In this document: piece by piece, positions 1 through 41,214 of the stretch
Numbering within the stretch: position 1 is the stretch's first letter
How the letters are laid out: each line of letters opens with the position of its first letter
IMG/VR virus record: IMGVR_UViG_3300032334_001259
Coordinates: 1 to 64,000 of that record
Reading direction: 5' to 3' (one strand)
DNA length: 64,000 bases
Position numbers and translations under genes: made by a program
Notes under the pieces: model-generated
Told to the model about the DNA's origin: nothing
Database searches by the model: none
Seen by the model: the letters and a program-made list of their open reading frames with translations, nothing else

Positions 1-2
1 GG

Positions 3-365
3 GTCATGCATATAAGCATCATATAAAATATGACTTGCTAAAAGATATAATTCCATATATTTTTCACTTGTAATTTTTTCATATGGATAACATATAAATG
101 TAAACTGACAGTCTTCTTTGCTACGTTGATTTACAACTTTACAAGCAGTTTGTGGAAATTTATGGCTTTCTATACGATTACGTATAACCCAACCAACTGC
201 AACTTGTCCTTCATAACCTTCACCATATGCTTCATAAAACAGCGCCTGCACTACGCACTCTGTTGGTGATTCCTGATAAACTTTTGGTTTTGGGAGTGGA
301 TCTTTAGAAAACGCAGGATAACTCACTACGATGAAGGCTACCAAAGATATAAAAAGCCGTTTCAT
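3..365 (-). CDS. SleB/Hydrolase_2-family cell wall hydrolase (3' end truncated by window; not in ORF track)
   Basis: ATG at 365 after SD GAGG. Manual translation MKRLFISLVAFIVVSYPAFS (signal-like)...ECVVQALFYEAYGEGYEGQVAVGWVIRNR...FPQTACKVVNQ...CQFTF, the typical SleB motif set. Confidence 0.85.
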   Translation of the reverse strand, partial: MKRLFISLVAFIVVSYPAFSKDPLPKPKVYQESPTECVVQALFYEAYGEGYEGQVAVGWVIRNRIESHKFPQTACKVVNQRSKEDCQFTFICYPYEKITSEKYMELYLLASHILYDAYMHD

Positions 366-379
366 TACCTCATAAAAGT

Positions 380-669
380 TGCAACTTTTCTGTTTCTAGG
401 TAAGTTGCCAACCCAAGAAATTATGCCGCTAGGCGCATTTCAACAGGTGCATTATCGTTTGCATCTATAACGTTTGTCAAAGTCTCTTCAAAGTCTTTAC
501 TGCACTTGTCGATCCTATTTCAGGCCCATAAAAGATACATCGGAAGGTAGACAGGGAAACTATTACACAAGTTCATCCGTGACTTGAAACCAATGTATCT
601 ATGGTGGACCTGGACGGTACCGCCCCGTCGTCCAACATGCTTATTTTACTCTGCGTCAACAACCGTGAC
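380..669 (-). ncRNA. ssrA: two-piece (circularly permuted) tmRNA, alphaproteobacterial type; outer ends approximate
   Basis: Acceptor piece ends GACGG-GGCGGTA-CCGTC-CAGGTCC-ACCA (CCA at 604-602). A 74-nt intervening segment (601-528) is closed by AGATACAT/ATGTATCT. Coding piece starts GGGCCTGAAATAGGATCGAC at 527, giving a 7-bp acceptor stem with G3:U. Tag ORF 462-421 reads ANDNAPVEMRLAA*. Confidence 0.95.
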
Positions 670-674
670 AAGAA

Positions 675-705
675 TATTTATAGCATCACTTATTGTTATT
701 GTCAA
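675..705 (-). promoter_or_regulatory. tmRNA promoter: sigma70 TTGACA-17-TATAAA whose -10 box is also a T4-type late TATAAATA
   Basis: Minus strand reads TTGACA ataacaataagtgatgc TATAAATA. Confidence 0.75.
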
Positions 706-840
706 GTTTAATTTCTTGTTGCTTACCACAATGTGGACAATACAGTTTTTTAGGCTCCCAATCGTCCATTACGGCGATACTAAACCACATTTTGCAAAAT
801 TCACAGGTAAAATGCCAAATTTTTTCTACGTTGGTTTGCA

Positions 841-1659
841 TTATTTTATTTTTTCCCAATAATCAAAATCACTTATCATATCATGGAATTGTGAACCAAG
901 ATGAAAACAATCTCTTGCATAGTAATCATTCTTTCTGCAAATCGCTGCCGCTTTAAGAATTTTATATTGTTTAGGAACGTAAACATTACAATCTAATTTA
1001 GATACAACATAATGAATAGCATCCCAACTTCTTTCATATGATATTTCTATTTCTTTTTGTGATGCTAAAAAATCAAAATAAAATTCACGCTTTTGTTTTT
1101 GTAATTCCATATCATTTGCAAATTCTTTAATTAATATAGAAATATTATTGTCTTCTAAATCCCACGGACCAAAATTATTATCATTATAATTTTCAGAATG
1201 TAAAAATTCACGTCTTGCTTTGTGTAATGAGTAAATGAAGATGAAAATATTTTTTGGTAAAACTTTACTTGTCCAAGACTTTAATAAACGGTATGCTACT
1301 TCTATACCACCACCACTTTGACCAAAATTATAAAATGAACCACCTAACTTTTGGTTAATTTTATATGCCCACGTATCTTCTATATTAAGACCAACACCAT
1401 CTGTTAAACTACAACCAAAAAACATATTAACATCATTATAGTTTTGTGTATAAAAGTCATCATATGTTCTAAAACCATAATTGTTATACAAATACTTTAT
1501 TTCAGTATTGATCCAATTATTCTTTTTTAATAATGCCTGATTGTTTTTTAGATTATATTCAAATAAGTTTTTACTGTCATTACCTATAAAATTATAAACA
1601 GTATGTGGCTTAAATAGCTTGTAACTATTTGAATAATTTTCAAAGAAATTATCTGTCAT
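841..1659 (-). CDS. SGNH/GDSL-like hydrolase-fold protein
   Basis: FFGCSLTDG block I-like motif, NFGQSGGG block II, C-terminal DxxH (RDCFH). Start moved to MTDNFF (TAATG coupling). Very AT-rich. Confidence 0.55.
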   Translation of the reverse strand: MTDNFFENYSNSYKLFKPHTVYNFIGNDSKNLFEYNLKNNQALLKKNNWINTEIKYLYNNYGFRTYDDFYTQNYNDVNMFFGCSLTDGVGLNIEDTWAYKINQKLGGSFYNFGQSGGGIEVAYRLLKSWTSKVLPKNIFIFIYSLHKARREFLHSENYNDNNFGPWDLEDNNISILIKEFANDMELQKQKREFYFDFLASQKEIEISYERSWDAIHYVVSKLDCNVYVPKQYKILKAAAICRKNDYYARDCFHLGSQFHDMISDFDYWEKIK

Positions 1660-4600
1660 TAGGTTCTTATTGTAGTAGTTTGTCCATCGGGACCAGCACC
1701 ACCCCACGGAGCAATTACGTTACGGTCCATGCCAGTATTAGTAACCTGCAACAATTGGTCATAAACATTGCCTAACTTTTTAAGCAGATTGGCTAAAACT
1801 TTATTACCAAGTAATGTATTACGTAAACCTTCTATATTTTGTGGTGTAAGCTGTGCCAACATTTCTAACATGCCATAAGTCATTTGTTCTGTTGCAAATG
1901 GATTGTTATATTTTGTTGTTCCAATATCACCATAAAGAATCTTGTTTACAATGCTTAAAATTGTAGTAACAAACATATCATTATCAGTAAGAATTAAACC
2001 ACGATTTGTAACTTGAGCAAATTGTTTTTGACTACGATCTAAACCAACAATAAACATTTTGTCACCAAGCACAAGTATATTATTATCAACTGCTTGTTGT
2101 AGTGTAGTTAAGCCAATATCTTCCAATACTTTTGAATTAGTAGTTTCCCATTGTAAATCATAGAACATTTCATCAGCTTGTGCTGGCAACATTTTACTTG
2201 GATCAAATCCTTTGTTTACCAACATTTGATTACGCATGTCTGCATAGATTTCTTGACCAGTTTGTGGAATATATGTATCGGTTAAGAAATCAGGAATATC
2301 TGGTAAATTACCGCTATAAGCATCAAGATAGAAGCCAGCAGGATCACGAAGATACTTGCTATGTGGTAATTTAAATCTTTCAACATTAACACCAAGTGTT
2401 TCAAGTGCAGCGGCATTACGACCTTGACGCATTGAGGCTTTAATAGCATCACCATAAATGTTATCTTGTGCTACACGTTCAAGATAGTCACCCATTTGTC
2501 CATAACCATTTTGCTGACCATAGTAAGGTAACCCATCTGCAAATACATAAGCACTTATTGGATTATTTTGAACTGGTGCAAATATATCAACACCCATTGC
2601 TGTGCAATGATGATTTTCTTTAAGTATTTGTGCACAACTTGCAGCATGTGCGGCTTCACTTGCTTGAATGGCTGATTGAATTGTAGGATTACTACTTGCT
2701 TTTATTACGCTTAATTGTGCTTCTATACTAGTAATTTGTGCATCTACGGCGGCATCAAGAGTAGTATAAATTGTTCCATTGATATTAATAGTATCACTTG
2801 AAGCAGGTGCGCCGCCGCCACCGCCATCGCCATTAACGTGATATTGTCCTGATAAAAGTTTGTTGAGAACAGTGATACGAGAATTTAATTCTACACCATC
2901 AGCGGTTCCCATTAAAATATTATTAGCATCTGTAATAACTGGTAAAGTGTCATTATGAATATAACCAGCAGGTGTTCCTATAAAATCTGCCATAGTAATT
3001 TCACCAATACTACCACCGCCATAACCAAATGTTTGGTAAAGTTTTGAAACGGCTTGTGGATATATTGGTGTGCTCATTTGACTCATATGATTAAGGTCAA
3101 GACCAGCATCAGTTTTGCTTAATGCTGTTCCAATATCATCAAATGTTTTTGCTTTAGTTACACCAAGACTTGTAAAATGCTGACCTAAATCACTAAATGA
3201 TTTACTTGGTCCAGTTGAATATAAATCAGGACACATATAACTCATATCTGTTAATTGTCCAAGATGATCAATTTTTTTACCCAAATTAAATTGGCTACTC
3301 ACAGCACCAACCGCTGTTGGATCATTTATACTGTTTAAAATAGATTGCACTTTTGCATCATATTGTGGATTATCGATACCAGCAATAGGAATATTATTTT
3401 TAACTAACTTCTGTGTAAGACCTGTTGTATTTCCTAAACCTGCATTCAGAATTTGTTTTGCAACACGTGCAGGTTGTTGTAATCGCAACATATTTGTTGT
3501 ATCAAAAGTTCCAAGATTTTGTAAATTACTTGCGGCGGCTGGTAGATTACTTGTGAGTGAACTCATACCATAACTTATAACACCATTATTATTAACAAAG
3601 TTTGCACCCATAGCACCTGGTCCGTAAGCACCAAAACGTAGAGCACTTGCTTCTGCAGCTGCACCTACAATATTATTGCTTATTCCACCAAATGCATTTG
3701 CTAAACCCATAGTTTGAACAAAACTGGCACTTGCACCTGCACTGGCACCAGCAACCATATTCATTCCAACACGTTGAATCATACCATTAAGACCACCGTT
3801 GGCTGCAAATTGTTGAACTGCATTTGGTAAACTTAACGGATTACGTAATACACCATTAAGTGGACCTAAAAATCCACCAATTGCACCACCTAACGCACCA
3901 CCTACTCCACCACTTACTATTTGTGTAATTTCTTTTGGTAATACACCAGTTAAACTTGGTAATATTCCACCGCCAATATTTGATAATCTATCAAACATAC
4001 CACCAGATAGTTGATTTAATGGACCAGTAGCTTGTCCAAGAGCTTGTCCTAATCCACCTCCTAAAAGTCCACCTGCTTGACTTAATGCACCGCCCATAAG
4101 TCCTGTTATTCCTGTAGCTCCTAAAGCACCAGTAGCAACAGATAATGCAGTGTTAATTGCCGCACCTAAACCATTTAAAAAACCAGCACCAGCAATTGCA
4201 CCAAAAATACCCATACCTGCACCAGCACATCCTGCTCCAGTGCCAGGTGCGGCACCTTTTGCATTTTTTGCTAATTCTGCGCTTGGTCCACCTTTTGTTA
4301 CTTTACCATCATAGGTTCCATTTGCAAGTGCGGCTTCATCTGCACGACGACCAGGATTTGCACTTAATGAACCTATTTCATTAGACATTGCAGTGCTATC
4401 ACCAGTTCTTGCTGCACCCACTGCATCACTTAAACATGTACTTCCTGGTCCATAATTGTAAGCTAAACTTGTATAAGCGGCTTGTTGTTCCGCTGTCATA
4501 TTGCTCCAATAAGGTTCGCCAATTCTATTGGCAATGCCAGCTGCATATGTGTCAGTTATAGATGTTTGTAATAAACTTTGAGCACCAGCTTGATCTATGG

Positions 4601-4751
4601 TATCACCAGCACGAACTGGTGTTCCATCTGCATAATAATGATTACCATATCCAACAGCCCAACCATTAACATCCCAATATGCTTTTTGAGCATAACCTTC
4701 ATGTGCAGCAATAAAACTGGCGGTAAGTGATGGGTCTTTTAGTGTACTCAT
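1659..4751 (-). CDS. large virion/baseplate protein with N-terminal GH24 lysozyme-like domain
   Basis: HEGYAQKAYWDVNGWAVGYG (E-x8-D), SLAYNYG and RRADEA lysozyme motifs, followed by a long Gly/Ala-rich region; near the PAAR gene. Confidence 0.7.
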   Translation of the reverse strand: MSTLKDPSLTASFIAAHEGYAQKAYWDVNGWAVGYGNHYYADGTPVRAGDTIDQAGAQSLLQTSITDTYAAGIANRIGEPYWSNMTAEQQAAYTSLAYNYGPGSTCLSDAVGAARTGDSTAMSNEIGSLSANPGRRADEAALANGTYDGKVTKGGPSAELAKNAKGAAPGTGAGCAGAGMGIFGAIAGAGFLNGLGAAINTALSVATGALGATGITGLMGGALSQAGGLLGGGLGQALGQATGPLNQLSGGMFDRLSNIGGGILPSLTGVLPKEITQIVSGGVGGALGGAIGGFLGPLNGVLRNPLSLPNAVQQFAANGGLNGMIQRVGMNMVAGASAGASASFVQTMGLANAFGGISNNIVGAAAEASALRFGAYGPGAMGANFVNNNGVISYGMSSLTSNLPAAASNLQNLGTFDTTNMLRLQQPARVAKQILNAGLGNTTGLTQKLVKNNIPIAGIDNPQYDAKVQSILNSINDPTAVGAVSSQFNLGKKIDHLGQLTDMSYMCPDLYSTGPSKSFSDLGQHFTSLGVTKAKTFDDIGTALSKTDAGLDLNHMSQMSTPIYPQAVSKLYQTFGYGGGSIGEITMADFIGTPAGYIHNDTLPVITDANNILMGTADGVELNSRITVLNKLLSGQYHVNGDGGGGGAPASSDTININGTIYTTLDAAVDAQITSIEAQLSVIKASSNPTIQSAIQASEAAHAASCAQILKENHHCTAMGVDIFAPVQNNPISAYVFADGLPYYGQQNGYGQMGDYLERVAQDNIYGDAIKASMRQGRNAAALETLGVNVERFKLPHSKYLRDPAGFYLDAYSGNLPDIPDFLTDTYIPQTGQEIYADMRNQMLVNKGFDPSKMLPAQADEMFYDLQWETTNSKVLEDIGLTTLQQAVDNNILVLGDKMFIVGLDRSQKQFAQVTNRGLILTDNDMFVTTILSIVNKILYGDIGTTKYNNPFATEQMTYGMLEMLAQLTPQNIEGLRNTLLGNKVLANLLKKLGNVYDQLLQVTNTGMDRNVIAPWGGAGPDGQTTTIRT

Positions 4752-5980
4752 TTTACATTTGTCCTACTAAATGTTGGTGGTGTCCAAGAAACGTTATTAG
4801 GAACATAAACATCTGCAACTGCATTTAACAAACCAGGTATAGCAATTGGTGCACCAGTTGGTACAAGTTTACGTAAACCTTTTGCTTCTTTGCGTAAACT
4901 TAAATCTTGATTTGAAGTTAGGTTCTTTGGATATGATTTAATAGAATCCAGTGGTGTATCTTGATTAAAATATTGTTTAGCAAGATCATGATTATCAGTG
5001 ACTCTTGCTACATTTGCTCCAATTAATGAAGCTGCAACATCAACCATTGTATGTGGAATAGCTTGACTAATTGTAGAATTAAAAAATTGTGTATCATCAC
5101 CTTTAGCAGCAGTTTTAAGTACATCAACATTATACAAAGCATTCTTTACATAGCTTACATCTGTTGCAAAAACCTTTTGATTTACATCAAAATCTTTAAC
5201 AACAGAACCATTGCCACTATAAGCCAATGAGCTACCAAGTGTATAAATGTTTGTATTACTGTTACCAGTTTTTTGATATATTGTTGCTGGTAAATTAACT
5301 AAAATACCAGTTACACTATCACGAATTGGTGGATGATAATTGTTAACTACTGCTACATTTGGAATTAAACCGCTTTGTGCCCAACGGTAAAGTTGACTGT
5401 TTACAGTATACAAACCTGCTACTGTATTTGGTTCATCATACGCCGTGCCTGGTCCAATTCCAAAAAAGTTTGTTGTTGTTTGTGTATTAAAATATCGTAA
5501 ATTGCTTACATTTGCTAAACTATTTGCATTAAGATATAAACTTGTGTTGCTTATAATATATTCAACTCTTCCAAGATAGGTATTAGCATAACTTCCATTT
5601 GCAACATATAATATATCACCATATGTTAATTCTGTTGCAAAATTAGTGCTATTACCTGTAACAACTGTGCTGTTAACATTTGCAGTTATATTTCCAGTTG
5701 TTGCATAAACATAATTTGGAATATTAGCTGTCATTGCACGATAATGAAAGTTTGTTGGATTTGTATTACTACTAATAGCAACATTTGCATTAGCAGTTAA
5801 TGTTATACTTGTATTACTATTAATATTACTAACATACCCAACAAATGTGTTGCTAACATTACCAATAACAGCACCAAGTTGTAATTGTGTTAAGAATGTT
5901 GTTCCATAACCAATTACTGTGGTATTAGTTGTATAAGTTCTTATATTTCCAGTGCCGTTTGCATAATTTGATAATGGCAT
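4748..5980 (-). CDS. Asn/Thr-rich virion structural (tail/baseplate) protein
   Basis: Two copies of a GNI..N.T.V.G..T.F.T.L..G...SNTS..L.AN beta-rich module typical of tail fibre N-termini. Confidence 0.55.
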   Translation of the reverse strand: MPLSNYANGTGNIRTYTTNTTVIGYGTTFLTQLQLGAVIGNVSNTFVGYVSNINSNTSITLTANANVAISSNTNPTNFHYRAMTANIPNYVYATTGNITANVNSTVVTGNSTNFATELTYGDILYVANGSYANTYLGRVEYIISNTSLYLNANSLANVSNLRYFNTQTTTNFFGIGPGTAYDEPNTVAGLYTVNSQLYRWAQSGLIPNVAVVNNYHPPIRDSVTGILVNLPATIYQKTGNSNTNIYTLGSSLAYSGNGSVVKDFDVNQKVFATDVSYVKNALYNVDVLKTAAKGDDTQFFNSTISQAIPHTMVDVAASLIGANVARVTDNHDLAKQYFNQDTPLDSIKSYPKNLTSNQDLSLRKEAKGLRKLVPTGAPIAIPGLLNAVADVYVPNNVSWTPPTFSRTNVK

Positions 5981-6247
5981 TTACATACCTACCAATACAT
6001 CCGATTCATTTGGTATCATGATGTGACCACACGCATCATAACTTCCTAAAAATCCTTGAGGACGACCTTCAATAATTACACTGCGGCTTGCCAATACAAT
6101 TGGGTTTGCTGGATGCAAATAAGGGTGACCTGTTACATAATCACCCATACGACTAGCTGGTCTACCTTGCATAATAACGCTTTGTGCGCCCATAATAGAA
6201 ACACCACCGCCGTTATTATAAGTTCCCATTTTTGCTGGTATTGGCAT
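5981..6247 (-). CDS. PAAR-repeat spike tip protein (gp5.4-like)
   Basis: PAKMG, GRPASRMGD and GRPQGFLGS repeats; His/Cys metal ligands (GH, CGH). Confidence 0.85.
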   Translation of the reverse strand: MPIPAKMGTYNNGGGVSIMGAQSVIMQGRPASRMGDYVTGHPYLHPANPIVLASRSVIIEGRPQGFLGSYDACGHIMIPNESDVLVGM

Positions 6248-6792: not shown

Positions 6793-7232
6793 TTTGTCTC
6801 CTTGATATTATTTCTTTCGCTCACACGATTACGTAAATCAGTCGTGCTAAATCTATGCTCTCTGCGATTAAAGTAAAGTTCTATGCCACGTTTTTTACAA
6901 ATATCACGACCAGTAAAATCCTTGTCACGATATTCTTCACCAAGTATACGCACATTAATTGGATACATTGCAAGAATATCTTCTAAATCTGCTTCTGTTA
7001 CATATGGAATAACTTCATCTACATAACGAACTGCAGCAAGTTGTGCATGACGTTCTACAACAGTTTGCACTGGTTTGTTTTTAGTAGGACGATCTAATGT
7101 TGGATCAACTTGCAATCCACAGATAAGATAATCACAATGATCTTTTGCCTCACGCAACATTGCTACATGCCCTGCGTGAAGTAAATCAAATGAACTGCAA
7201 CTGAAACCTATCTTTTTTATATTGTTAGTCAT
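6789..7232 (-). CDS. cytidylyltransferase (TagD/glycerol-3-phosphate CT-like)
   Basis: FDLLHAGH (HxGH) motif, YVDEV, RxxxFSTT. Confidence 0.85.
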   Translation of the reverse strand: MTNNIKKIGFSCSSFDLLHAGHVAMLREAKDHCDYLICGLQVDPTLDRPTKNKPVQTVVERHAQLAAVRYVDEVIPYVTEADLEDILAMYPINVRILGEEYRDKDFTGRDICKKRGIELYFNRREHRFSTTDLRNRVSERNNIKETK

Positions 7233-8343
7233 TTTTAATTACTTCTATCTTCCAGTCTTTTGCTTTACCACGATTTGGTATTCTATTATATAGATATGCG
7301 GCGTGAATGGTTGCAAAACTTAAATTTAATTTTTTACATAGTCCTTTAAGATTTCCAACCTGTTGATATACTTCACCCGTTGGGGATGTAAGTTTCCAAT
7401 GGTTGCTAAAATAATGGTTTTCACCAGTCGGCATTATTCTATTTTCTTTAATTTTTTGTATTGTTTCTGGACTATGATGCTTGCCATACATTGGATTATT
7501 GCTGCCAGCAGTGAGTTCTCTAAACTTTGCACGAGTTTCTTCACTGTGCTTTTTAGGTCCATAACCGCCTCGTTCTTTCTGCAATTGTGAACGTTTGGCT
7601 CTTTGGATTTCTGCACCTTCTTTGCCATATATTTGTTCATAAGTTCTTCCCTTATGATTTGGTGGTCTTGCCTCTAAACATATATTTGTTAAAATACCAT
7701 AAGGTTCATATCCCTTACGACCATATCGCAATATTAAATCTTCTTCCATATTGTAAGCAAGTTCTTCATCAATAATATCTTCTGCAATATATTCAATTTG
7801 TGGTTCTAATCCTGCTTTTCTAATAGCATCAATCTTATTTTCTTTATGAATATTATCGTTTCTTGACATATCCCAAAGATGTGTTTGTGCTCTTTTTCCA
7901 GTTCCCTTGCCAATATAAAAAGGCATATTGTTTCTTGGGTCTATGAGAGCATATATATAATACATATTTTCAATCTCCTGATTATATTTATCAAGAGATA
8001 GAGAATATATATTATTTGTGGTATATTTTTGTATATTATTTTTTAATTTGGCAAATACATTTGTATTTCTTTTATCAGCAAATGGAGTAATATCTATCAA
8101 GTTTCCATCAATATCTTGCCATACACTATGTAATATTGCCTGATATCCCCACGCACTTTCTAAAAAGTAATAGCCAAGTATTTTTTTACCACCGTGTCCA
8201 AGAATATAATTTTTTACATTCGCATGGCATATATTTTCTTCACAACTGGCATCGGGTGTGACTGGAATATTTCCCAACCAATCACAGCCAATATTACGGG
8301 CAAAATCAGCAACTTCAGTTGTTGATGGTATAAACCAAATCAA
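7225..8343 (-). CDS. free-standing GIY-YIG homing endonuclease with NUMOD3 repeats, fused to an N-terminal domain of unknown function
   Basis: YYIYALIDPR..PFYIGKG...R; NUMOD3-like KHSEETRAKF and NPMYGKHHSPETIQKI; internal TAAATA + AGGAG + ATG at 7965. Confidence 0.85.
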   Translation of the reverse strand: MIWFIPSTTEVADFARNIGCDWLGNIPVTPDASCEENICHANVKNYILGHGGKKILGYYFLESAWGYQAILHSVWQDIDGNLIDITPFADKRNTNVFAKLKNNIQKYTTNNIYSLSLDKYNQEIENMYYIYALIDPRNNMPFYIGKGTGKRAQTHLWDMSRNDNIHKENKIDAIRKAGLEPQIEYIAEDIIDEELAYNMEEDLILRYGRKGYEPYGILTNICLEARPPNHKGRTYEQIYGKEGAEIQRAKRSQLQKERGGYGPKKHSEETRAKFRELTAGSNNPMYGKHHSPETIQKIKENRIMPTGENHYFSNHWKLTSPTGEVYQQVGNLKGLCKKLNLSFATIHAAYLYNRIPNRGKAKDWKIEVIKND

Positions 8344-9437
8344 AGACTAAATCCATTGAAAGTATTCTTGTCAATGTCTTGTTTAACACCACCAATGACA
8401 TACGAACTCACCTGCACTTGTTGGGGAGCCACCTGCACTTCTGCACCAGCAATCCACTTTTGTGTCCAAGGTAGCGGATTATTCTTTGTAACATATGGCT
8501 GACCAAGACCAACTGCTTGCATACGTTTATTAGCAATAAACTCAACATATTCTGCAAGTAGTTGATAGTTAAGACCAATCATACTACCATCTTTGAACAA
8601 GTATTGTGCCCATGCCTTTTCTTGTTGGACTGCATCATCAAACAACTTGATAGCTTGTTCACGACATTCTACTTCAATCTTTTCATAATCTGGATCATCT
8701 TTTGGAAGAATCTTCAACAGTGACTGTGTGCCAGCAAGATGTAGATTTTCATCACGTGCAATGAATTTGATAATCTTGGCATTGCCTTCCATCTTCTTCA
8801 ATTCAGCAAATGCCCAACTACAAGCGAATGACACATAGAAACGAACACCTTCAAGAATGTTCACACTCATAAGTGCAAGCCATAATGCTTTCTTATGTTC
8901 ATATGAATTTGTTTGATGTCCAAGAGCATGATTATTATTCAAATCAATTAGTTTGTCATAAAGTTCTGTAATATCACCAGCACAATCAACAATCTCTTGA
9001 ATATCCATCATCTCATCAAATACTTTTGATGGGTTAGCATACACATTGCGGATGATATGTGTATAAGAACGAGAGTGAATAGTTTCACTAAATGTCCATG
9101 TTGTAATCCAAGTTTCTAATTCTGGAAGTGAACAAATAGGACCAAATGCTACTGCTGGTGCACGACCTTGCACAGAATCAAGCAGAATCTGGCGTTTAAG
9201 ATTACTTGTAAAGATATGTTGCTCACTTGCTGTCAAATCTTTGAAATCTTTAGCATCACGCAAAATATCTACTTCTTGTGGTAACCAAAAGAATGATAAT
9301 TGTTTTTCGGTAAGTTTTTCAAACTGTTTATACTTTAGTGTATCATATCGTTGGATACTTACACCACCATTTGGGTCTAAAAATGCCAAAGCCTTTGTGT
9401 GATCACTCTTATCATTTGCGTCAAATACTGTACTCAT
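8340..9437 (-). CDS. nrdB: ribonucleotide reductase class Ia beta subunit
   Basis: FFW.PQE, LLDSVQ, ETIHSRSY, EGVRFY and RDENLH di-iron ligands; C-terminal SSY. Confidence 0.97.
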   Translation of the reverse strand: MSTVFDANDKSDHTKALAFLDPNGGVSIQRYDTLKYKQFEKLTEKQLSFFWLPQEVDILRDAKDFKDLTASEQHIFTSNLKRQILLDSVQGRAPAVAFGPICSLPELETWITTWTFSETIHSRSYTHIIRNVYANPSKVFDEMMDIQEIVDCAGDITELYDKLIDLNNNHALGHQTNSYEHKKALWLALMSVNILEGVRFYVSFACSWAFAELKKMEGNAKIIKFIARDENLHLAGTQSLLKILPKDDPDYEKIEVECREQAIKLFDDAVQQEKAWAQYLFKDGSMIGLNYQLLAEYVEFIANKRMQAVGLGQPYVTKNNPLPWTQKWIAGAEVQVAPQQVQVSSYVIGGVKQDIDKNTFNGFSL

Positions 9438-9485: not shown

Positions 9486-11798
9486 TTAAATCGTGCAACT
9501 TTCACAAGCATCTTGGTCATCAAGTAGTTGTAAGTTTTTAACTTCAAAATCTTGTTTTTGTTCAACAAACTTGCTGACATCAACTTCACCTTGACCATCA
9601 TAGGTATTGAAATAATATAGGGTTTTAATACCATATTTGTAGCAAAGTAGCAGATGACCAATCATAACACTCATTGGAATCTTTTCATCTTCGTAGAATG
9701 TTGGATTATATGATGTATTGGTTGAAATACTTTGGTCAATATACTTTTGTAGGATAGCAACAATCTTCAAATAACCCTCTGGTGACTTTTGGTCCCAAAG
9801 CAATTCATACTTGTTCTTAAGTTTACGAAACTCTGGAACAACTTGCTTTAATACGCCATGCTTACTTTGCTTGACACTTATAAGGCTACGTGGTGGTTCA
9901 ATGCCGTTTGTAGCATTAGCAACCTGTGCGCTTGTTTCTGCTGGCATAAGAGCCATAAGAGTTGAATTACGGATACCATGTTCTTTAAGACTTGCACGAA
10001 GTGATTCCCAATCCATTGTAAACACTGGTCCAACAAGTTCATCAACTTCACGCTTATATGTGTCAATAGGTAGAATACCGTTGCCATATTTTGTTTCATT
10101 ACTCTTTGGACATGCACCTTTTTCAATAGCAAGTTGGTTACTTGCTTTGATGAGATAGTAACTCCATGCTTCTGCATATTCATCAACAAGTGGCAATGCT
10201 AATGGATCGCTGTATGATAAGTCATTCTTGGCGAGGAAATATGCAAAGTTAATAATACCAATACCCAATGGGCGACGATTCATTGTTGAAAGCTGTGCCG
10301 CCAAAACAGGATATTTTTGGTAGTCAAGCAATTCATCAAGACCACGAACAGCAAGGTCACACATCTTTTCAAAGTCTTTTGGTTCTTTTACATTTCCCCA
10401 GTTAATAGCACTTAATGTGCAAAGTGAGATTTCACCTTCTTCATCAAAGATATGCTTAAGTGGTTTTGTTGGTAATGCAATTTCAGCACAAAGATTGCTT
10501 TGCTTAACAGGTGCGACACTTTCAATAAATGCACCATGGCTATTGGCATGGTCAACATTCATAAGATAAATGCGACCTGTATTCTTGCGTTCTTCCATAA
10601 ACATACTAAACAAGTCAATAGCTTTATAAGTTTTCTTACGAATCTTACTGTTTTTTTCAGCAGCCTCATAAAGTTGTTTAAACTTGTCTTGGTCTTGGAA
10701 GAAAGCATCGTATAAGCCTGGAACATCACTTGGACTAAAACAAGTGATGTCCCCACCTTGGAGAAGACGCTCATACATTAACTTGTTAAATTGCACACCA
10801 TAATCCATATGGCGAACACGATTATCTTCTGTTCCCTTATTATTTTTAAGAACTAATAAATCTTCTACTTCATAATGCCATAGTGGATAGTAAAGTGTAG
10901 CCGCACCGTTGCGAACACCACCTTGTGAACAGCTACGAACAGCAGTTTGGAAATGCTTATAAAATGGAATTAAACCTGTGTGGCTGGCGTCACCTTTACG
11001 AATTGGAGAACCAATAGCACGGATAGCCCCAGCACCAATCCCAATGCCTGCCTTTTGACTTACATACTTGACAATGGCACTACTTGTTGCATTGATGCTG
11101 TCTAGACTATCGTCAGTTTCAATTAATACACAGCTACTAAACTGACGTTGTGGTGTGCGGACACCAGCCATCACAGGAGTAGGTAAACTAATATCATGCT
11201 TACTAATAGCATCATAATAGTCCCTAACATAACGTAAACGAGTTTCTTTTGGATACTTTGAGAATAGTGTTGCAGCAATAAGTGCATATGCAACTTGTGG
11301 CGTTTCCATAATTTGACCAGTTACACGGTTCTGCACAAGATACTTGCCACGTAGCTGTTCCATTGCAACATAAGCAAGACTGCAATCACGTTCATGGTCA
11401 ACAAACTTATTAATAGTTGCCCATTCTTCTTCGGTATAATCTGTTAATAGTGCAGGATCATAAAATCCACTTGCTATATTCTTTTTAATAATATCAATCA
11501 ATGCCCACGGATGATAGTCACCATATACTTCTTTGCGTAGGTGATAATTTACAAGACGACCTGCGACATATTGGTAATTAGGCGCATCTTCACTGATAAG
11601 ATCAGCAGCAGCCTTAATCATAGTTTCTTGAATTTCACTGGTTTTAATGTTATTATAAAATTGAATCTGACTTCGTAGTTCTAGTTCACTTGCACTTACG
11701 TTGTTGATATTTTCTGTTGCCCAGAATACTACTTTGTGAAGTTTATCAATATTCAATGGTTCTTTACGACCATCACGTTTAGTAACATTAATCGCCAT
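9486..11798 (-). CDS. nrdA: ribonucleotide reductase class Ia alpha subunit with ATP cone
   Basis: VTKRDG ATP cone, FSSC, SNLCAE, SLCTL, TLYY, C-terminal CESC. Confidence 0.98.
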   Translation of the reverse strand: MAINVTKRDGRKEPLNIDKLHKVVFWATENINNVSASELELRSQIQFYNNIKTSEIQETMIKAAADLISEDAPNYQYVAGRLVNYHLRKEVYGDYHPWALIDIIKKNIASGFYDPALLTDYTEEEWATINKFVDHERDCSLAYVAMEQLRGKYLVQNRVTGQIMETPQVAYALIAATLFSKYPKETRLRYVRDYYDAISKHDISLPTPVMAGVRTPQRQFSSCVLIETDDSLDSINATSSAIVKYVSQKAGIGIGAGAIRAIGSPIRKGDASHTGLIPFYKHFQTAVRSCSQGGVRNGAATLYYPLWHYEVEDLLVLKNNKGTEDNRVRHMDYGVQFNKLMYERLLQGGDITCFSPSDVPGLYDAFFQDQDKFKQLYEAAEKNSKIRKKTYKAIDLFSMFMEERKNTGRIYLMNVDHANSHGAFIESVAPVKQSNLCAEIALPTKPLKHIFDEEGEISLCTLSAINWGNVKEPKDFEKMCDLAVRGLDELLDYQKYPVLAAQLSTMNRRPLGIGIINFAYFLAKNDLSYSDPLALPLVDEYAEAWSYYLIKASNQLAIEKGACPKSNETKYGNGILPIDTYKREVDELVGPVFTMDWESLRASLKEHGIRNSTLMALMPAETSAQVANATNGIEPPRSLISVKQSKHGVLKQVVPEFRKLKNKYELLWDQKSPEGYLKIVAILQKYIDQSISTNTSYNPTFYEDEKIPMSVMIGHLLLCYKYGIKTLYYFNTYDGQGEVDVSKFVEQKQDFEVKNLQLLDDQDACESCTI

Positions 11799-41100: not shown

Positions 41101-41174
41101 TGGTGGAGAATATCAGAGTCGAACTGATGAATCCGCCTTGCAAAGGCGGCGGTTTTCCACTAGCCTAATTCCCC
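41101..41174 (-). tRNA. tRNA-Ala(UGC), CCA encoded
   Basis: GGGGAAT/ATTCTCC stem with G3:U70; anticodon arm CCGCC-TTTGCAA-GGCGG; T arm ATCAG-TTCGACT-CTGAT; TTGACA promoter at 41213. Confidence 0.95.
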
Positions 41175-41214
41175 ACAGGATAATAATATATATTCATATA
41201 TTATACTTGTCAAT

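What the first reader, a model, noticed from the sequence alone, without database searches (positions are those of the whole stretch)
380..705. Phage-encoded two-piece tmRNA with a dual early/late promoter
Seen: permuted order (acceptor piece, 74-nt self-pairing intervening loop, coding piece), a GGCGGTA T-loop, tag ANDNAPVEMRLAA, and a -10 box that is also TATAAATA. Known: permuted ssrA with ANDN tags is typical of Alphaproteobacteria, and terminal AA directs ClpXP degradation. Inference: host is alphaproteobacterial, and the phage maintains ribosome rescue throughout infection.
Basis: partly seen in the sequence, partly recalled or inferred. Interest (0 to 1): 0.6.

Follow-up and report, generated by a model that had tools for sequence, protein, structure and literature searches.

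The report
Jumbo-phage two-piece tmRNA, early-plus-late promoter
A 338-kb freshwater T4-like jumbo phage carries an intact two-piece ribosome-rescue RNA (tmRNA) of a kind already known from other phages, but its promoter combines early-gene and late-gene signals, an arrangement that recurs in many phage tmRNA genes and in no cellular tmRNA gene examined.

Summary
ARAGORN and two Rfam models find a circularly permuted (two-piece) tmRNA gene on the minus strand at window 709-377. It has the tag ANDNAPVEMRLAA, T-loop GGCGGUA, a G3.U pair, an ACCA end and a 74-nt self-pairing intervening segment.

The genome is a complete 338,435-bp T4-like jumbo phage from freshwater, kin of PA5oct, GAP32 and Phosso. 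It has 23 tRNAs, no SmpB and no integrase.

The promoter reading holds up:
- TTGACA, a 17-nt spacer, TGn and TATAAATA lie just upstream of the gene.
- ATAAATA alone precedes structural genes in this genome, and TTGACA-type promoters precede replication genes.
- The phage encodes a gp55 late-sigma homologue.
- Only three composite sites exist in the genome.

The same composite promoter precedes 34 of 74 tmRNA genes in an all-viral clade (support 95/98) that holds this gene. It precedes 0 of 87 cellular alphaproteobacterial tmRNA genes. It is also present in the cultured phages Melnitz and Phosso.

The inference that the host is alphaproteobacterial is not secure. The gene belongs to a phage-only lineage, and Melnitz carries the same type while infecting a non-alphaproteobacterium. 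Expression and processing could not be tested because no RNA runs hold the sequence.

Phage two-piece tmRNAs are already published, so this is a new member of a known kind with a possibly unreported conserved promoter.

The parts
700..705 (-). -35 element TTGACA of the sigma-70-type (early) half of the promoter
   Evidence: Read directly. It lies exactly 17 nt upstream of the -10. TTGACA is enriched in sense upstream of genes (49 sense against 11 antisense) and precedes replication and recombination genes.
675..685 (-). TGn + TATAAATA: an extended -10 (TGcTATAAA) overlapping the T4-type late-promoter octamer TATAAATA (682-675)
   Evidence: TATAAATA occurs 18 times in 338 kb, 16 of them intergenic. 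ATAAATA alone precedes portal, baseplate and tail-fibre genes. The same composite recurs in phage tmRNA genes.
602..669 (-). Acceptor piece (about 68 nt; 5' end inferred from the promoter): 5' hairpin, 5' strands of helix 2, T arm (GACGG/CCGUC, loop GGCGGUA 624-618), 3' strand of the acceptor stem CAGGUCC, ACCA end at 605-602
   Evidence: ARAGORN 3' tRNA domain and cmscan alignments. The 5' end is inferred, not mapped.
528..601 (-). 74-nt intervening segment, presumably excised from the precursor; its ends form an 11-bp stem
   Evidence: positions 94-167 of the gene. Fold -21.8 kcal/mol, z -4.43.
377..527 (-). Coding piece: 5' strand of the acceptor stem GGGCCUG (G3.U), D-loop analogue AAAUAGGAUCGA, 3' strands of helix 2, resume region, tag ORF, 3' hairpin
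   Evidence: The helices were checked by hand on the cmscan alignment: acceptor 7/7 pairs, T stem 5/5, helix 2 6/6 and 6/7.
421..462 (-). Tag reading frame GCA...GCA TAA = ANDNAPVEMRLAA plus stop
   Evidence: Relatives keep an ANDN-type start (one has AKKAHNDN) and a hydrophobic-AA end.
381..408 (-). 3' hairpin GCAACUU/AAGUUGC with loop ACCUAGAAACAGAA, followed by a short U run (about 377-374)
   Evidence: the loop matches the alpha_tmRNA consensus ACCuGGCAACAGAA while the stem differs in a compensatory way. Fold. The simple terminator scan does not call it.
3..365 (-). Next gene downstream: SleB-like cell wall hydrolase with a signal-peptide-like N-terminus. Its ATG at 365 lies 11 nt after the tmRNA 3' end, behind RBS GAGG, with no promoter of its own. 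The ORF runs over the contig start and continues at the genome's other end.
   Evidence: PF07486 at 50.4 bits. Both halves were found at 78-224 and at genome 338225-338422. PHROG endolysin hits.
686..859 (-). Upstream 57-aa zinc-ribbon-like ORF; its last codons overlap the tmRNA promoter
   Evidence: Weak Zn_ribbon_8 hit, below the Pfam cut-off.

Best explanation
This is an intact and probably functional two-piece (circularly permuted) tmRNA gene carried by a lytic 338-kb T4-like jumbo phage from fresh water. It belongs to a lineage of alpha-type tmRNAs found only on viral contigs, and that lineage travels with its own composite promoter. The promoter has a sigma-70-type -35 TTGACA, a 17-nt spacer and an extended -10, which host RNA polymerase would read early. 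Its -10 is at the same time the T4-type late octamer TATAAATA, which the phage's gp55 late sigma would read. The RNA would therefore be made both early and late in infection. The inferred pathway is as follows. The precursor is cut by host tRNA-processing enzymes into an acceptor piece of about 68 nt ending in CCA and a coding piece of about 150 nt, and the 74-nt hairpin between them is discarded. The pieces stay paired through the acceptor stem and helix 2. Host AlaRS charges the RNA through its G3.U pair. Host SmpB delivers it to stalled ribosomes, since the phage has no SmpB of its own. Stalled ribosomes then resume on GCA and add ANDNAPVEMRLAA, which marks the product for ClpXP-type proteolysis and frees the ribosome. 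Shown here: gene identity, intact helices and tag, promoter elements, their class-specific use in this genome, and their conservation. Inferred: transcription timing, processing, charging, and dependence on host SmpB.
For: Identity: ARAGORN and two Rfam models. The helices are intact by hand check. Across the 74-row phage clade the acceptor stem is 95.4% paired, with GC/CG/TA/AT swaps at pairs 4-6. The T stem is 99.5% paired with swaps at pairs 1-3, and G3.U is present in 73 of 74. Phage context: 338,435 bp, estimated 100% complete, 123-bp terminal repeat, 23 tRNAs; Gp23 capsid at 328 bits; gp55 homologue phrog_234 at E 6e-23; no SmpB; no tyrosine integrase. Late motif: TAAATA occurs 193 times genome-wide, 118 of them within 100 nt upstream of genes in sense orientation. 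NATAAATA words are the most enriched upstream 8-mers, at 15-18 fold. Of the nine largest ORFs behind ATAAATA alone, six have hits and all six are virion proteins: portal, baseplate, tail fibre and structural. ORFs behind TTGACA alone are clamp loader, UvsX, SbcD-like, nucleases and RNA ligase. Composite sites: 3 in the genome against 0.63 expected. Five tRNA genes with their own promoter have the TTGACA type only. Conservation: the composite precedes 34 of 74 tmRNA genes of the viral clade, and a further 21 have NTAAATA. Among 87 cellular alphaproteobacterial genes, none has the composite and 8 have NTAAATA. The cultured phages Melnitz (TTGACA-N17-TATAAATA) and Phosso (TTGACT-N17-GTAAATA) share the arrangement. 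Every composite copy keeps A rather than the sigma-70-preferred T at the sixth position of the -10 hexamer, plus the following TA. That fits selection on the late octamer as well as on the sigma-70 elements.
Against: There are no RNA data: no sequencing run on record as RNA holds the sequence. Transcription start, timing and two-piece processing are therefore untested. As a sigma-70 -10, TATAAA lacks the conserved final T, and the simple promoter scanner does not call it. A gp45 clamp homologue was not found with phrog_223, and gp33 was not searched. The tmRNA scores only 108 bits where cellular alpha tmRNAs score about 160-313, and it lacks their conserved CUAUGGCGAUAAAC segment. The late element could instead serve the hydrolase gene that starts 11 nt after the tmRNA. 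The viral sample was retrieved with a pattern that fixes the T-loop and the 3' end of the acceptor stem, so those positions are not independent evidence.
Confidence: 0.7

Rival explanations
1. The promoter is a single sigma-70 promoter only. TATAAATA is just a TATAAT-like -10 in an AT-rich phage, and the tmRNA is an early gene, as the Melnitz paper assumed.
For: Perfect -35, 17-nt spacer and the TGn extended -10. Buchholz et al. describe the Melnitz tmRNA as lying downstream of an early promoter (PMC9004378).
Against: Early promoters of this genome use TATATT or TATTAT, not TATAAATA. The full octamer, including the non-sigma-70 positions, is conserved across divergent phage tmRNA genes, and 19 clade members have NTAAATA without any -35. 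In this genome the octamer marks structural genes, and a gp55 homologue is present.
Confidence: 0.2
2. The late element mainly serves the SleB-like hydrolase gene immediately downstream. The tmRNA lies in its leader and is co-transcribed, so late tmRNA expression is a by-product.
For: The hydrolase ATG lies 11 nt after the tmRNA 3' end behind an RBS, with no promoter between them. The 3' hairpin is not called as a terminator. In Melnitz the tmRNA is likewise described as directly upstream of, and in one operon with, a protein gene.
Against: The octamer keeps a fixed position relative to the tmRNA in many contigs. According to the paper the downstream gene in Melnitz is a different one, a transcription coactivator. 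Downstream genes of the other contigs were not examined. The two readings do not exclude each other.
Confidence: 0.25
3. The host is an alphaproteobacterium, and the tmRNA type reflects the host.
For: It is alpha-type by Rfam. Of five cultured capsid relatives, only Sinorhizobium phage Phosso carries a tmRNA, and it is alpha-type. The neighbouring hydrolase family PF07486 rang only in Bacillus subtilis and Caulobacter among 14 control genomes.
Against: The gene lies in an all-viral clade with no cellular member among 87 sampled. Melnitz has the same type and infects OM43. The best capsid matches are phages of Pseudomonas, Vibrio, Cronobacter and Xanthomonas. The nine nearest viral contigs have locus G+C of 35-52% against 35.5% for this genome, which suggests varied hosts.
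Confidence: 0.45
4. The RNA does not rescue ribosomes for the phage's benefit. It acts instead as a decoy that titrates host SmpB, or it retargets tagging towards destruction of host proteins.
For: The phage has no SmpB. A TLD-only phage tmRNA (DS6A) has been discussed as a possible SmpB titrator (PMC4131195). Selective tagging of host proteins was proposed for Melnitz.
Against: The resume region and tag frame are complete and conserved, with a standard LAA end, and all helices are intact. Nothing in the sequence separates this reading from ordinary trans-translation.
Confidence: 0.1
5. It is a host-derived passenger or an attachment-site remnant from integration at ssrA, and is not functional.
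For: Many IMG/VR contigs matching the same pattern hold only an acceptor-like piece (65 of 117). Integration at tmRNA genes is common (PMC4383910, listed).
Against: The gene is full-length with promoter, both pieces and tag. The genome has no tyrosine integrase. The gene sits in a phage-specific clade with compensatory changes.
Confidence: 0.03

Closest known systems
Two-piece ssrA of Methylophilales phage Melnitz (MZ577097; Buchholz et al. 2022, PMC9004378) and the 53 two-piece tmRNAs that paper counted in cultured phages
   Same: Alpha-type permuted tmRNA on a lytic T4-like phage. The Rfam score is about the same (106.7 against 108.2 bits), the promoter is the same TTGACA-N17-TATAAATA, the tag has the ANDN...LAA form, and a protein gene follows directly.
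   Different: Melnitz is a 141-kb marine kyanovirus. The paper reports a glutamine riboswitch at the tmRNA's 3' domain, whereas no riboswitch reaches Rfam's gathering score in this window. This phage is a 338-kb freshwater jumbo phage of the PA5oct/GAP32/Phosso group. The paper called the promoter early only.
tmRNA of Sinorhizobium phage Phosso (PV764938), a 469-kb cultured relative by capsid (67.6% aa)
   Same: Alpha-type two-piece tmRNA at 108 bits, with a TTGACT-N17-GTAAATA promoter. It falls in the same all-viral clade.
   Different: Its intervening segment is about 408 nt against 74 nt here. Its tag is ANDNVSTKVALAA. ARAGORN misses it. Its host is known, an alphaproteobacterium.
Cellular alphaproteobacterial two-piece tmRNA (Rfam RF01849; Caulobacter prototype, Keiler et al. 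2000, cited from PMC9004378)
   Same: Gene order, T-loop GGCGGUA, G3.U, D-loop analogue GAAAUAGGAUCGAC, ANDN tag start, and conserved 3' hairpin loop.
   Different: Cellular genes score about 160-313 bits. They carry the CUAUGGCGAUAAAC helix segment and a CTTT...CTATATT promoter, and none of 87 has the composite promoter. The phage gene lacks that segment and branches outside them.
T4 late promoters (TATAAATA read by gp55 with gp33 and gp45; Geiduschek and Kassavetis 2010, cited in PMC9004378)
   Same: The octamer lies at -10. There is a gp55 homologue, and the motif precedes structural genes without any -35.
   Different: The genome-wide motif here is NATAAATA or NTAAATA. At the tmRNA it is fused with a full sigma-70 -35 and extended -10. 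gp45 was not detected with the T4 profile.

Membership tests
Permuted (two-piece) tmRNA, alpha type (Rfam RF01849 / RF04321) | Covariance-model score above the curated gathering score | tested here: met
   108.2 bits against 50, and 100.5 bits against 47. The same result came from the whole genome.
Permuted (two-piece) tmRNA, alpha type (Rfam RF01849 / RF04321) | Gene order acceptor piece, then intervening segment, then coding piece | tested here: met
   ARAGORN marks it 'Permuted', with the 3' tRNA domain at gene positions 55-93 and the 5' domain at 168-191.
Permuted (two-piece) tmRNA, alpha type (Rfam RF01849 / RF04321) | tRNA-like domain: 7-bp acceptor stem with G3.U, T arm, discriminator A and encoded CCA | tested here: met
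   GGGCCUG/CAGGUCC with G3.U, GACGG/CCGUC, loop GGCGGUA, ACCA. Covariation in the clade supports the stems.
Permuted (two-piece) tmRNA, alpha type (Rfam RF01849 / RF04321) | Resume codon and short tag ORF ending in hydrophobic-AA plus a stop | tested here: met
   Resume region uauagauGCA. Tag ANDNAPVEMRLAA followed by TAA.
Permuted (two-piece) tmRNA, alpha type (Rfam RF01849 / RF04321) | Precursor processed into two RNAs that stay paired | not testable with these tools
   No RNA run holds the sequence, and only contigs could be laid.
Permuted (two-piece) tmRNA, alpha type (Rfam RF01849 / RF04321) | SmpB partner available | tested here: not met
   No PF01668 match in the complete phage genome. 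Host SmpB would have to serve, and the host is unknown.
Cellular alphaproteobacterial ssrA lineage (descent from the current host) | Branches among cellular alphaproteobacterial tmRNAs and carries their conserved CUAUGGCGAUAAAC segment and CTATATT promoter | tested here: not met
   It lies in an all-viral set of 74 rows (95/98) with 0 of 87 cellular rows inside. The segment is deleted in the cmscan alignment and absent in the phage copies.
T4-type late promoter | TATAAATA at -10 of the transcription unit | tested here: met
   Window 682-675, about 6-7 nt before the first nucleotide of the Rfam-aligned acceptor-piece hairpin.
T4-type late promoter | Phage encodes a gp55-type late sigma factor | tested here: met
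   phrog_234 match at E 6.1e-23, genome 160922-161233 (-). The profile was identified with T4 gp55.
T4-type late promoter | The motif marks late (virion) genes genome-wide and needs no -35 | tested here: met
   61 of 71 ATAAATA sites are intergenic. Portal, baseplate, tail-fibre and structural genes lie behind ATAAATA alone, and replication genes lie behind TTGACA alone.
T4-type late promoter | Co-activator gp33 and sliding clamp gp45 present | tested here: inconclusive
   phrog_223 (gp45) gave no match. A clamp loader is present. gp33 was not searched.
T4-type late promoter | Late-time initiation mapped at the site | not testable with these tools
   No RNA data.
Sigma-70-type early promoter | -35 TTGACA, 16-18 nt spacer, -10 TATAAT with A at position 2 and T at position 6 | tested here: inconclusive
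   Perfect -35, 17-nt spacer, TGn extended -10, hexamer TATAAA (5 of 6, lacking the final T). The consensus scanner does not list it for that reason.

The most novel reading that the evidence does not exclude
Phage two-piece tmRNAs may be an old, exclusively viral lineage that spreads among T4-like phages as a cassette of gene plus composite early/late promoter, independently of host class. Their late-phase expression may serve a phage-specific need rather than housekeeping rescue. One candidate need is clearing ribosomes stalled on mRNAs or tRNAs cut by phage nucleases or by host abortive-infection RNases, that is, a counter-defence acting together with the 23 phage tRNAs.
Probability: 0.25. 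Interest if true: 0.65.

Novelty: new member of a known kind. Interest (0 to 1): 0.42.

Why it matters
Phage tmRNAs are catalogued, but their timing and purpose are unknown; the one detailed paper assumed early expression. The composite early-plus-late promoter is conserved in a phage-only tmRNA clade and present in two cultured phages, Melnitz and Phosso. That turns 'when and why do phages make their own tmRNA' into a question that ordinary time-course transcript mapping and promoter mutants can answer. The clade result also warns against reading host taxonomy from the type of a phage tmRNA.

Tried and rejected
- Megablast of window 1-6000 and blastn of the tmRNA against cultured phage genomes found nothing. 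Blastn of a marine viral tmRNA (L036) hit only an unrelated Rhodobacter phage stretch.
- The exact 23-nt T-arm-plus-acceptor word occurs in one of 185,579 species genomes, an Azospirillum MAG. I took this as coincidence, because that genome's tmRNA is a typical 284-bit cellular one and groups with the cellular rows. I used it only as a handle.
- RF00023 (one-piece tmRNA) in five cultured relatives hit only tRNA-sized stretches below the cut-off.
- ARAGORN fails on Phosso's tmRNA because of its long intervening segment; Rfam finds it.
- The simple promoter and terminator scan lists neither the promoter nor the 3' hairpin. The promoter fails its rule of T at hexamer position 6.
- My first two extraction patterns missed many cellular genes. 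The final tree uses fuzzy anchors and recovers 87 of 90 cellular loci.
- gp45 was not found with phrog_223.
- The attachment-site-remnant idea was rejected: full gene, no integrase.
- The large protein searches, structure prediction and complex prediction were not used, because no claim here rests on them. No alternative genetic code was needed.
- The unpublished genome G041 enters only the 149-of-151 tally.

Full report
**1. What is there**

On the minus strand of window 709-377 lies a complete circularly permuted tmRNA gene.
- ARAGORN reports 'tmRNA*, permuted' with tag ANDNAPVEMRLAA.
- Rfam's alpha_tmRNA model scores 108.2 bits (gathering 50, E 1.4e-28), and the newer tmRNA_permuted model scores 100.5 bits.
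- ARAGORN's bracket structure and the cmscan alignment give a 7-bp acceptor stem GGGCCUG/CAGGUCC with the G3.U pair used by alanyl-tRNA synthetase.
- They also give a 5-bp T stem with loop GGCGGUA, discriminator A plus an encoded CCA, and both parts of helix 2 paired (6 of 6 and 6 of 7).
- The resume region is uauagauGCA, followed by 13 sense codons and TAA.
- A 3' hairpin has a loop (ACCUAGAAACAGAA) that matches the family consensus, while its stem differs in a compensatory way.
- The segment between the CCA end (602) and the first G of the coding piece (527) is exactly 74 nt. It folds into a long hairpin at -21.8 kcal/mol, z -4.4.

**2. Whose genome it is**

The window is the first 64 kb of a 338,435-bp IMG/VR virus record. 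The record has a 123-bp terminal repeat, is estimated 100% complete, and has 35.5% G+C.
- It has 23 tRNA genes besides the tmRNA.
- It has a T4-type major capsid protein (Pfam Gp23, 328 bits) and a homologue of the T4 late sigma factor gp55 (phrog_234, E 6e-23).
- It has no SmpB and no tyrosine integrase.
- Its capsid protein is 61-69% identical to those of the jumbo phages PA5oct, Vibrio phage 2.275.O, GAP32, CBB and XbC2, and of Sinorhizobium phage Phosso.
- Near-identical or related DNA occurs only in freshwater, lake, pond and freshwater-sediment metagenomes (18 runs, 13 studies). No holder is on record as RNA.

**3. The promoter**

Read on the minus strand, the gene is preceded by TTGACA (705-700), a 17-nt spacer ending in TGc, and TATAAATA (682-675). 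I tested whether the octamer means anything in this genome.
- TATAAATA occurs 18 times in 338 kb, and 16 of these are intergenic, although only 6.4% of the genome is intergenic.
- NATAAATA and ATAAATA[TA] are the most enriched 8-mers in the 100 nt upstream of ORFs, at 15-18 fold.
- 61 of 71 ATAAATA sites are intergenic, and most have no -35.
- TAAATA occurs 193 times. A rough base-composition estimate gives about 700. Of the 193, 118 lie upstream of genes in sense orientation and 32 in antisense.
- Of the nine largest ORFs preceded by ATAAATA alone, six have annotation and all six are virion proteins: portal, baseplate wedge, tail fibres and structural proteins.
- ORFs preceded by TTGACA alone are clamp loader, UvsX, SbcD-like nuclease, other nucleases, RNA ligase and an ATPase.
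- The early promoters use TTGACA-N-TGn-TATATT or TATTAT.

So the genome has two promoter classes with the expected gene classes behind them, and the tmRNA promoter joins both. Only three such composite sites exist in the genome, against 0.63 expected. Five tRNA genes with a promoter of their own have the early type only.

**4. Relatives**

A scan of IMG/VR for the alpha-type T-loop and acceptor word found at least 120 contigs. ARAGORN finds complete permuted tmRNAs in 48 of them.
- The closest is on a 150-kb contig: L100, 73% identity over 268 nt, tag ANDNSLLEMRLAA.
- Several carriers are large contigs that share other genes with this phage.
- In a maximum-likelihood tree of 82 viral rows and 87 cellular tmRNAs, the window's gene lies in a set of 74 rows, all viral. 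Support is ultrafast bootstrap 95 and SH-aLRT 98.
- Within that set it lies in a subclade of ten rows (96/95).
- The cellular rows were drawn from an even sample of 151 alphaproteobacterial genomes.
A cellular sister lineage therefore cannot be excluded.
- Cellular genes score about 160-313 bits on RF01849 and share a CUAUGGCGAUAAAC segment and a CTTT...CTATATT promoter. The phage copies lack both.

**5. The composite promoter is a property of the viral clade**

Of the 74 clade members, the counts are:
- 34 have TTGACN-N16-18-NTAAATA in front of the acceptor piece.
- 19 have NTAAATA only.
- 2 have both elements at another spacing.
- 3 have the -35 only.
- 16 have neither.

Of the 87 cellular genes, none has the composite and 8 have NTAAATA.

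The cultured phage Melnitz has cTTGACA-N17-TATAAATA before its tmRNA. The paper describing Melnitz calls this an early promoter (PMC9004378). Phosso has TTGACT-N17-GTAAATA.

In the composite copies, TGn, the A at the sixth hexamer position and the following TA are all kept. This fits selection on both a sigma-70 extended -10 and the late octamer.

Compensatory changes in the acceptor and T stems across the clade show that the RNA is under structural selection. The T-loop and the last three acceptor positions were fixed by the search pattern, so they count for nothing in that test.

**6. Host**

The alpha type does not give the host.
- Against an alphaproteobacterial host: the gene belongs to a phage lineage, not to a sampled cellular one. 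Melnitz infects an OM43 methylophile yet carries this type. Most cultured capsid relatives infect Gammaproteobacteria and have no tmRNA.
- For an alphaproteobacterial host: Phosso, on Sinorhizobium, is the one cultured relative tested that has such a tmRNA. The adjacent SleB-like hydrolase family rang only in Bacillus and Caulobacter among 14 control genomes.

I put the alphaproteobacterial host at about even odds.

**7. Context and mechanism**

The next gene is a SleB-like cell wall hydrolase (PF07486). Its two halves lie at the two ends of the contig. It starts 11 nt after the tmRNA behind its own ribosome-binding site and has no promoter of its own. The tmRNA's 3' hairpin is not a strong terminator. 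Co-transcription is therefore possible, and part of the value of the late element may lie there.

The most likely working model has these steps:
- Transcription occurs early by host sigma-70 polymerase and late by gp55-polymerase.
- Host tRNA-processing enzymes cut the precursor into two pieces.
- Host AlaRS charges the RNA.
- Host SmpB delivers it to stalled ribosomes.
- Stalled products are tagged with a ClpXP-type degron.

Only the sequence-level parts of this are shown here. Timing, processing and activity are inferred.

**8. Known or new**

Phage tmRNAs have been listed since the mycobacteriophages and Bacillus phage G (PMC4131195). Huge phages carry tmRNA and SmpB (PMC7162821). Buchholz et al. 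counted 53 two-piece tmRNAs among cultured phages, mostly aquatic.

The finding is thus a new member of a known kind, in a phage group (PA5oct/GAP32-like) where the four cultured gammaproteobacterial phages tested lack it. I did not find the conserved composite promoter or the phage-only clade described in the papers searched. That search is limited, and I do not claim priority.

**9. Limits and house rules**

The unpublished genome G041 enters only the tally.

Noticed in passing
whole genome G000; examples in window at 7991, 15599, 18954, 20633, 40034, 57374, 58954, 62379: The genome-wide late-promoter word is NATAAATA or NTAAATA. It is strongly depleted inside genes and sits 10-45 nt before start codons. 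A separate early class reads gcTTGACA-N14/15-TGn-TATATT. The two classes separate virion genes from replication genes.
   Followed up: yes
window 41101-41174 (-), promoter TTGACA at 41213: tRNA-Ala(UGC) has its own early-type promoter (TTGACA-N17-TATATA) and no late motif. The same holds for tRNA-Asn, Ser, Val and Gln elsewhere in the genome.
   Followed up: partly
genome 95896 (+) and 319952 (-): These are the only two other composite TTGACA-N16/17-TATAAATA sites. The first precedes a small ORF just upstream of the main tRNA cluster (96.7-104.5 kb). The second precedes an ORF of unknown function.
   Followed up: no
window 1-365 and genome 338225-338435: The contig is cut inside the SleB-like hydrolase gene, and the 123-bp terminal repeat lies within it. 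The 'ends' are therefore an assembly break of a circular or circularly permuted map, not physical termini.
   Followed up: partly
window 1659-4751 (-): A 1030-aa protein has an N-terminal phage lysozyme domain (PF00959) only. The remaining 900 aa or so have no match. It may be a virion-associated lysin.
   Followed up: no
window 7225-8343 (-), next to nrdB 8340-9437 and nrdA 9486-11798: A homing-endonuclease-like ORF (phrog_314) abuts the ribonucleotide reductase genes.
   Followed up: no
window 456-700, in freshwater run X7: A 4.9-kb contig of a related freshwater phage aligns on both sides but has 217 unalignable letters in place of these 243. That points to a strongly diverged or replaced 5' half of the tmRNA locus in a relative.
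   Followed up: no
L181 (Sinorhizobium phage Phosso, record 349553-350242): Phosso's two-piece tmRNA has an intervening segment of about 408 nt, far longer than the viral median of about 78 nt. ARAGORN misses it for that reason, so it may be unannotated in the record.
   Followed up: partly
L110 (IMGVR_UViG_3300005139_000011) and seven other viral-contig rows (L004, L015, L038, L061, L064, L067, L104): These rows fall among the cellular tmRNAs or on very long branches. They are likely host tmRNA genes at prophage borders, or spurious fuzzy matches, rather than phage-lineage tmRNAs.
   Followed up: no
L125/L126 (MAG Azospirillum sp., NZ_DASPMG010000085.1): This is the only one of 185,579 species genomes with the phage's exact 23-nt T-arm-plus-acceptor word. 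Its tmRNA is otherwise a typical cellular one at 284 bits.
   Followed up: partly
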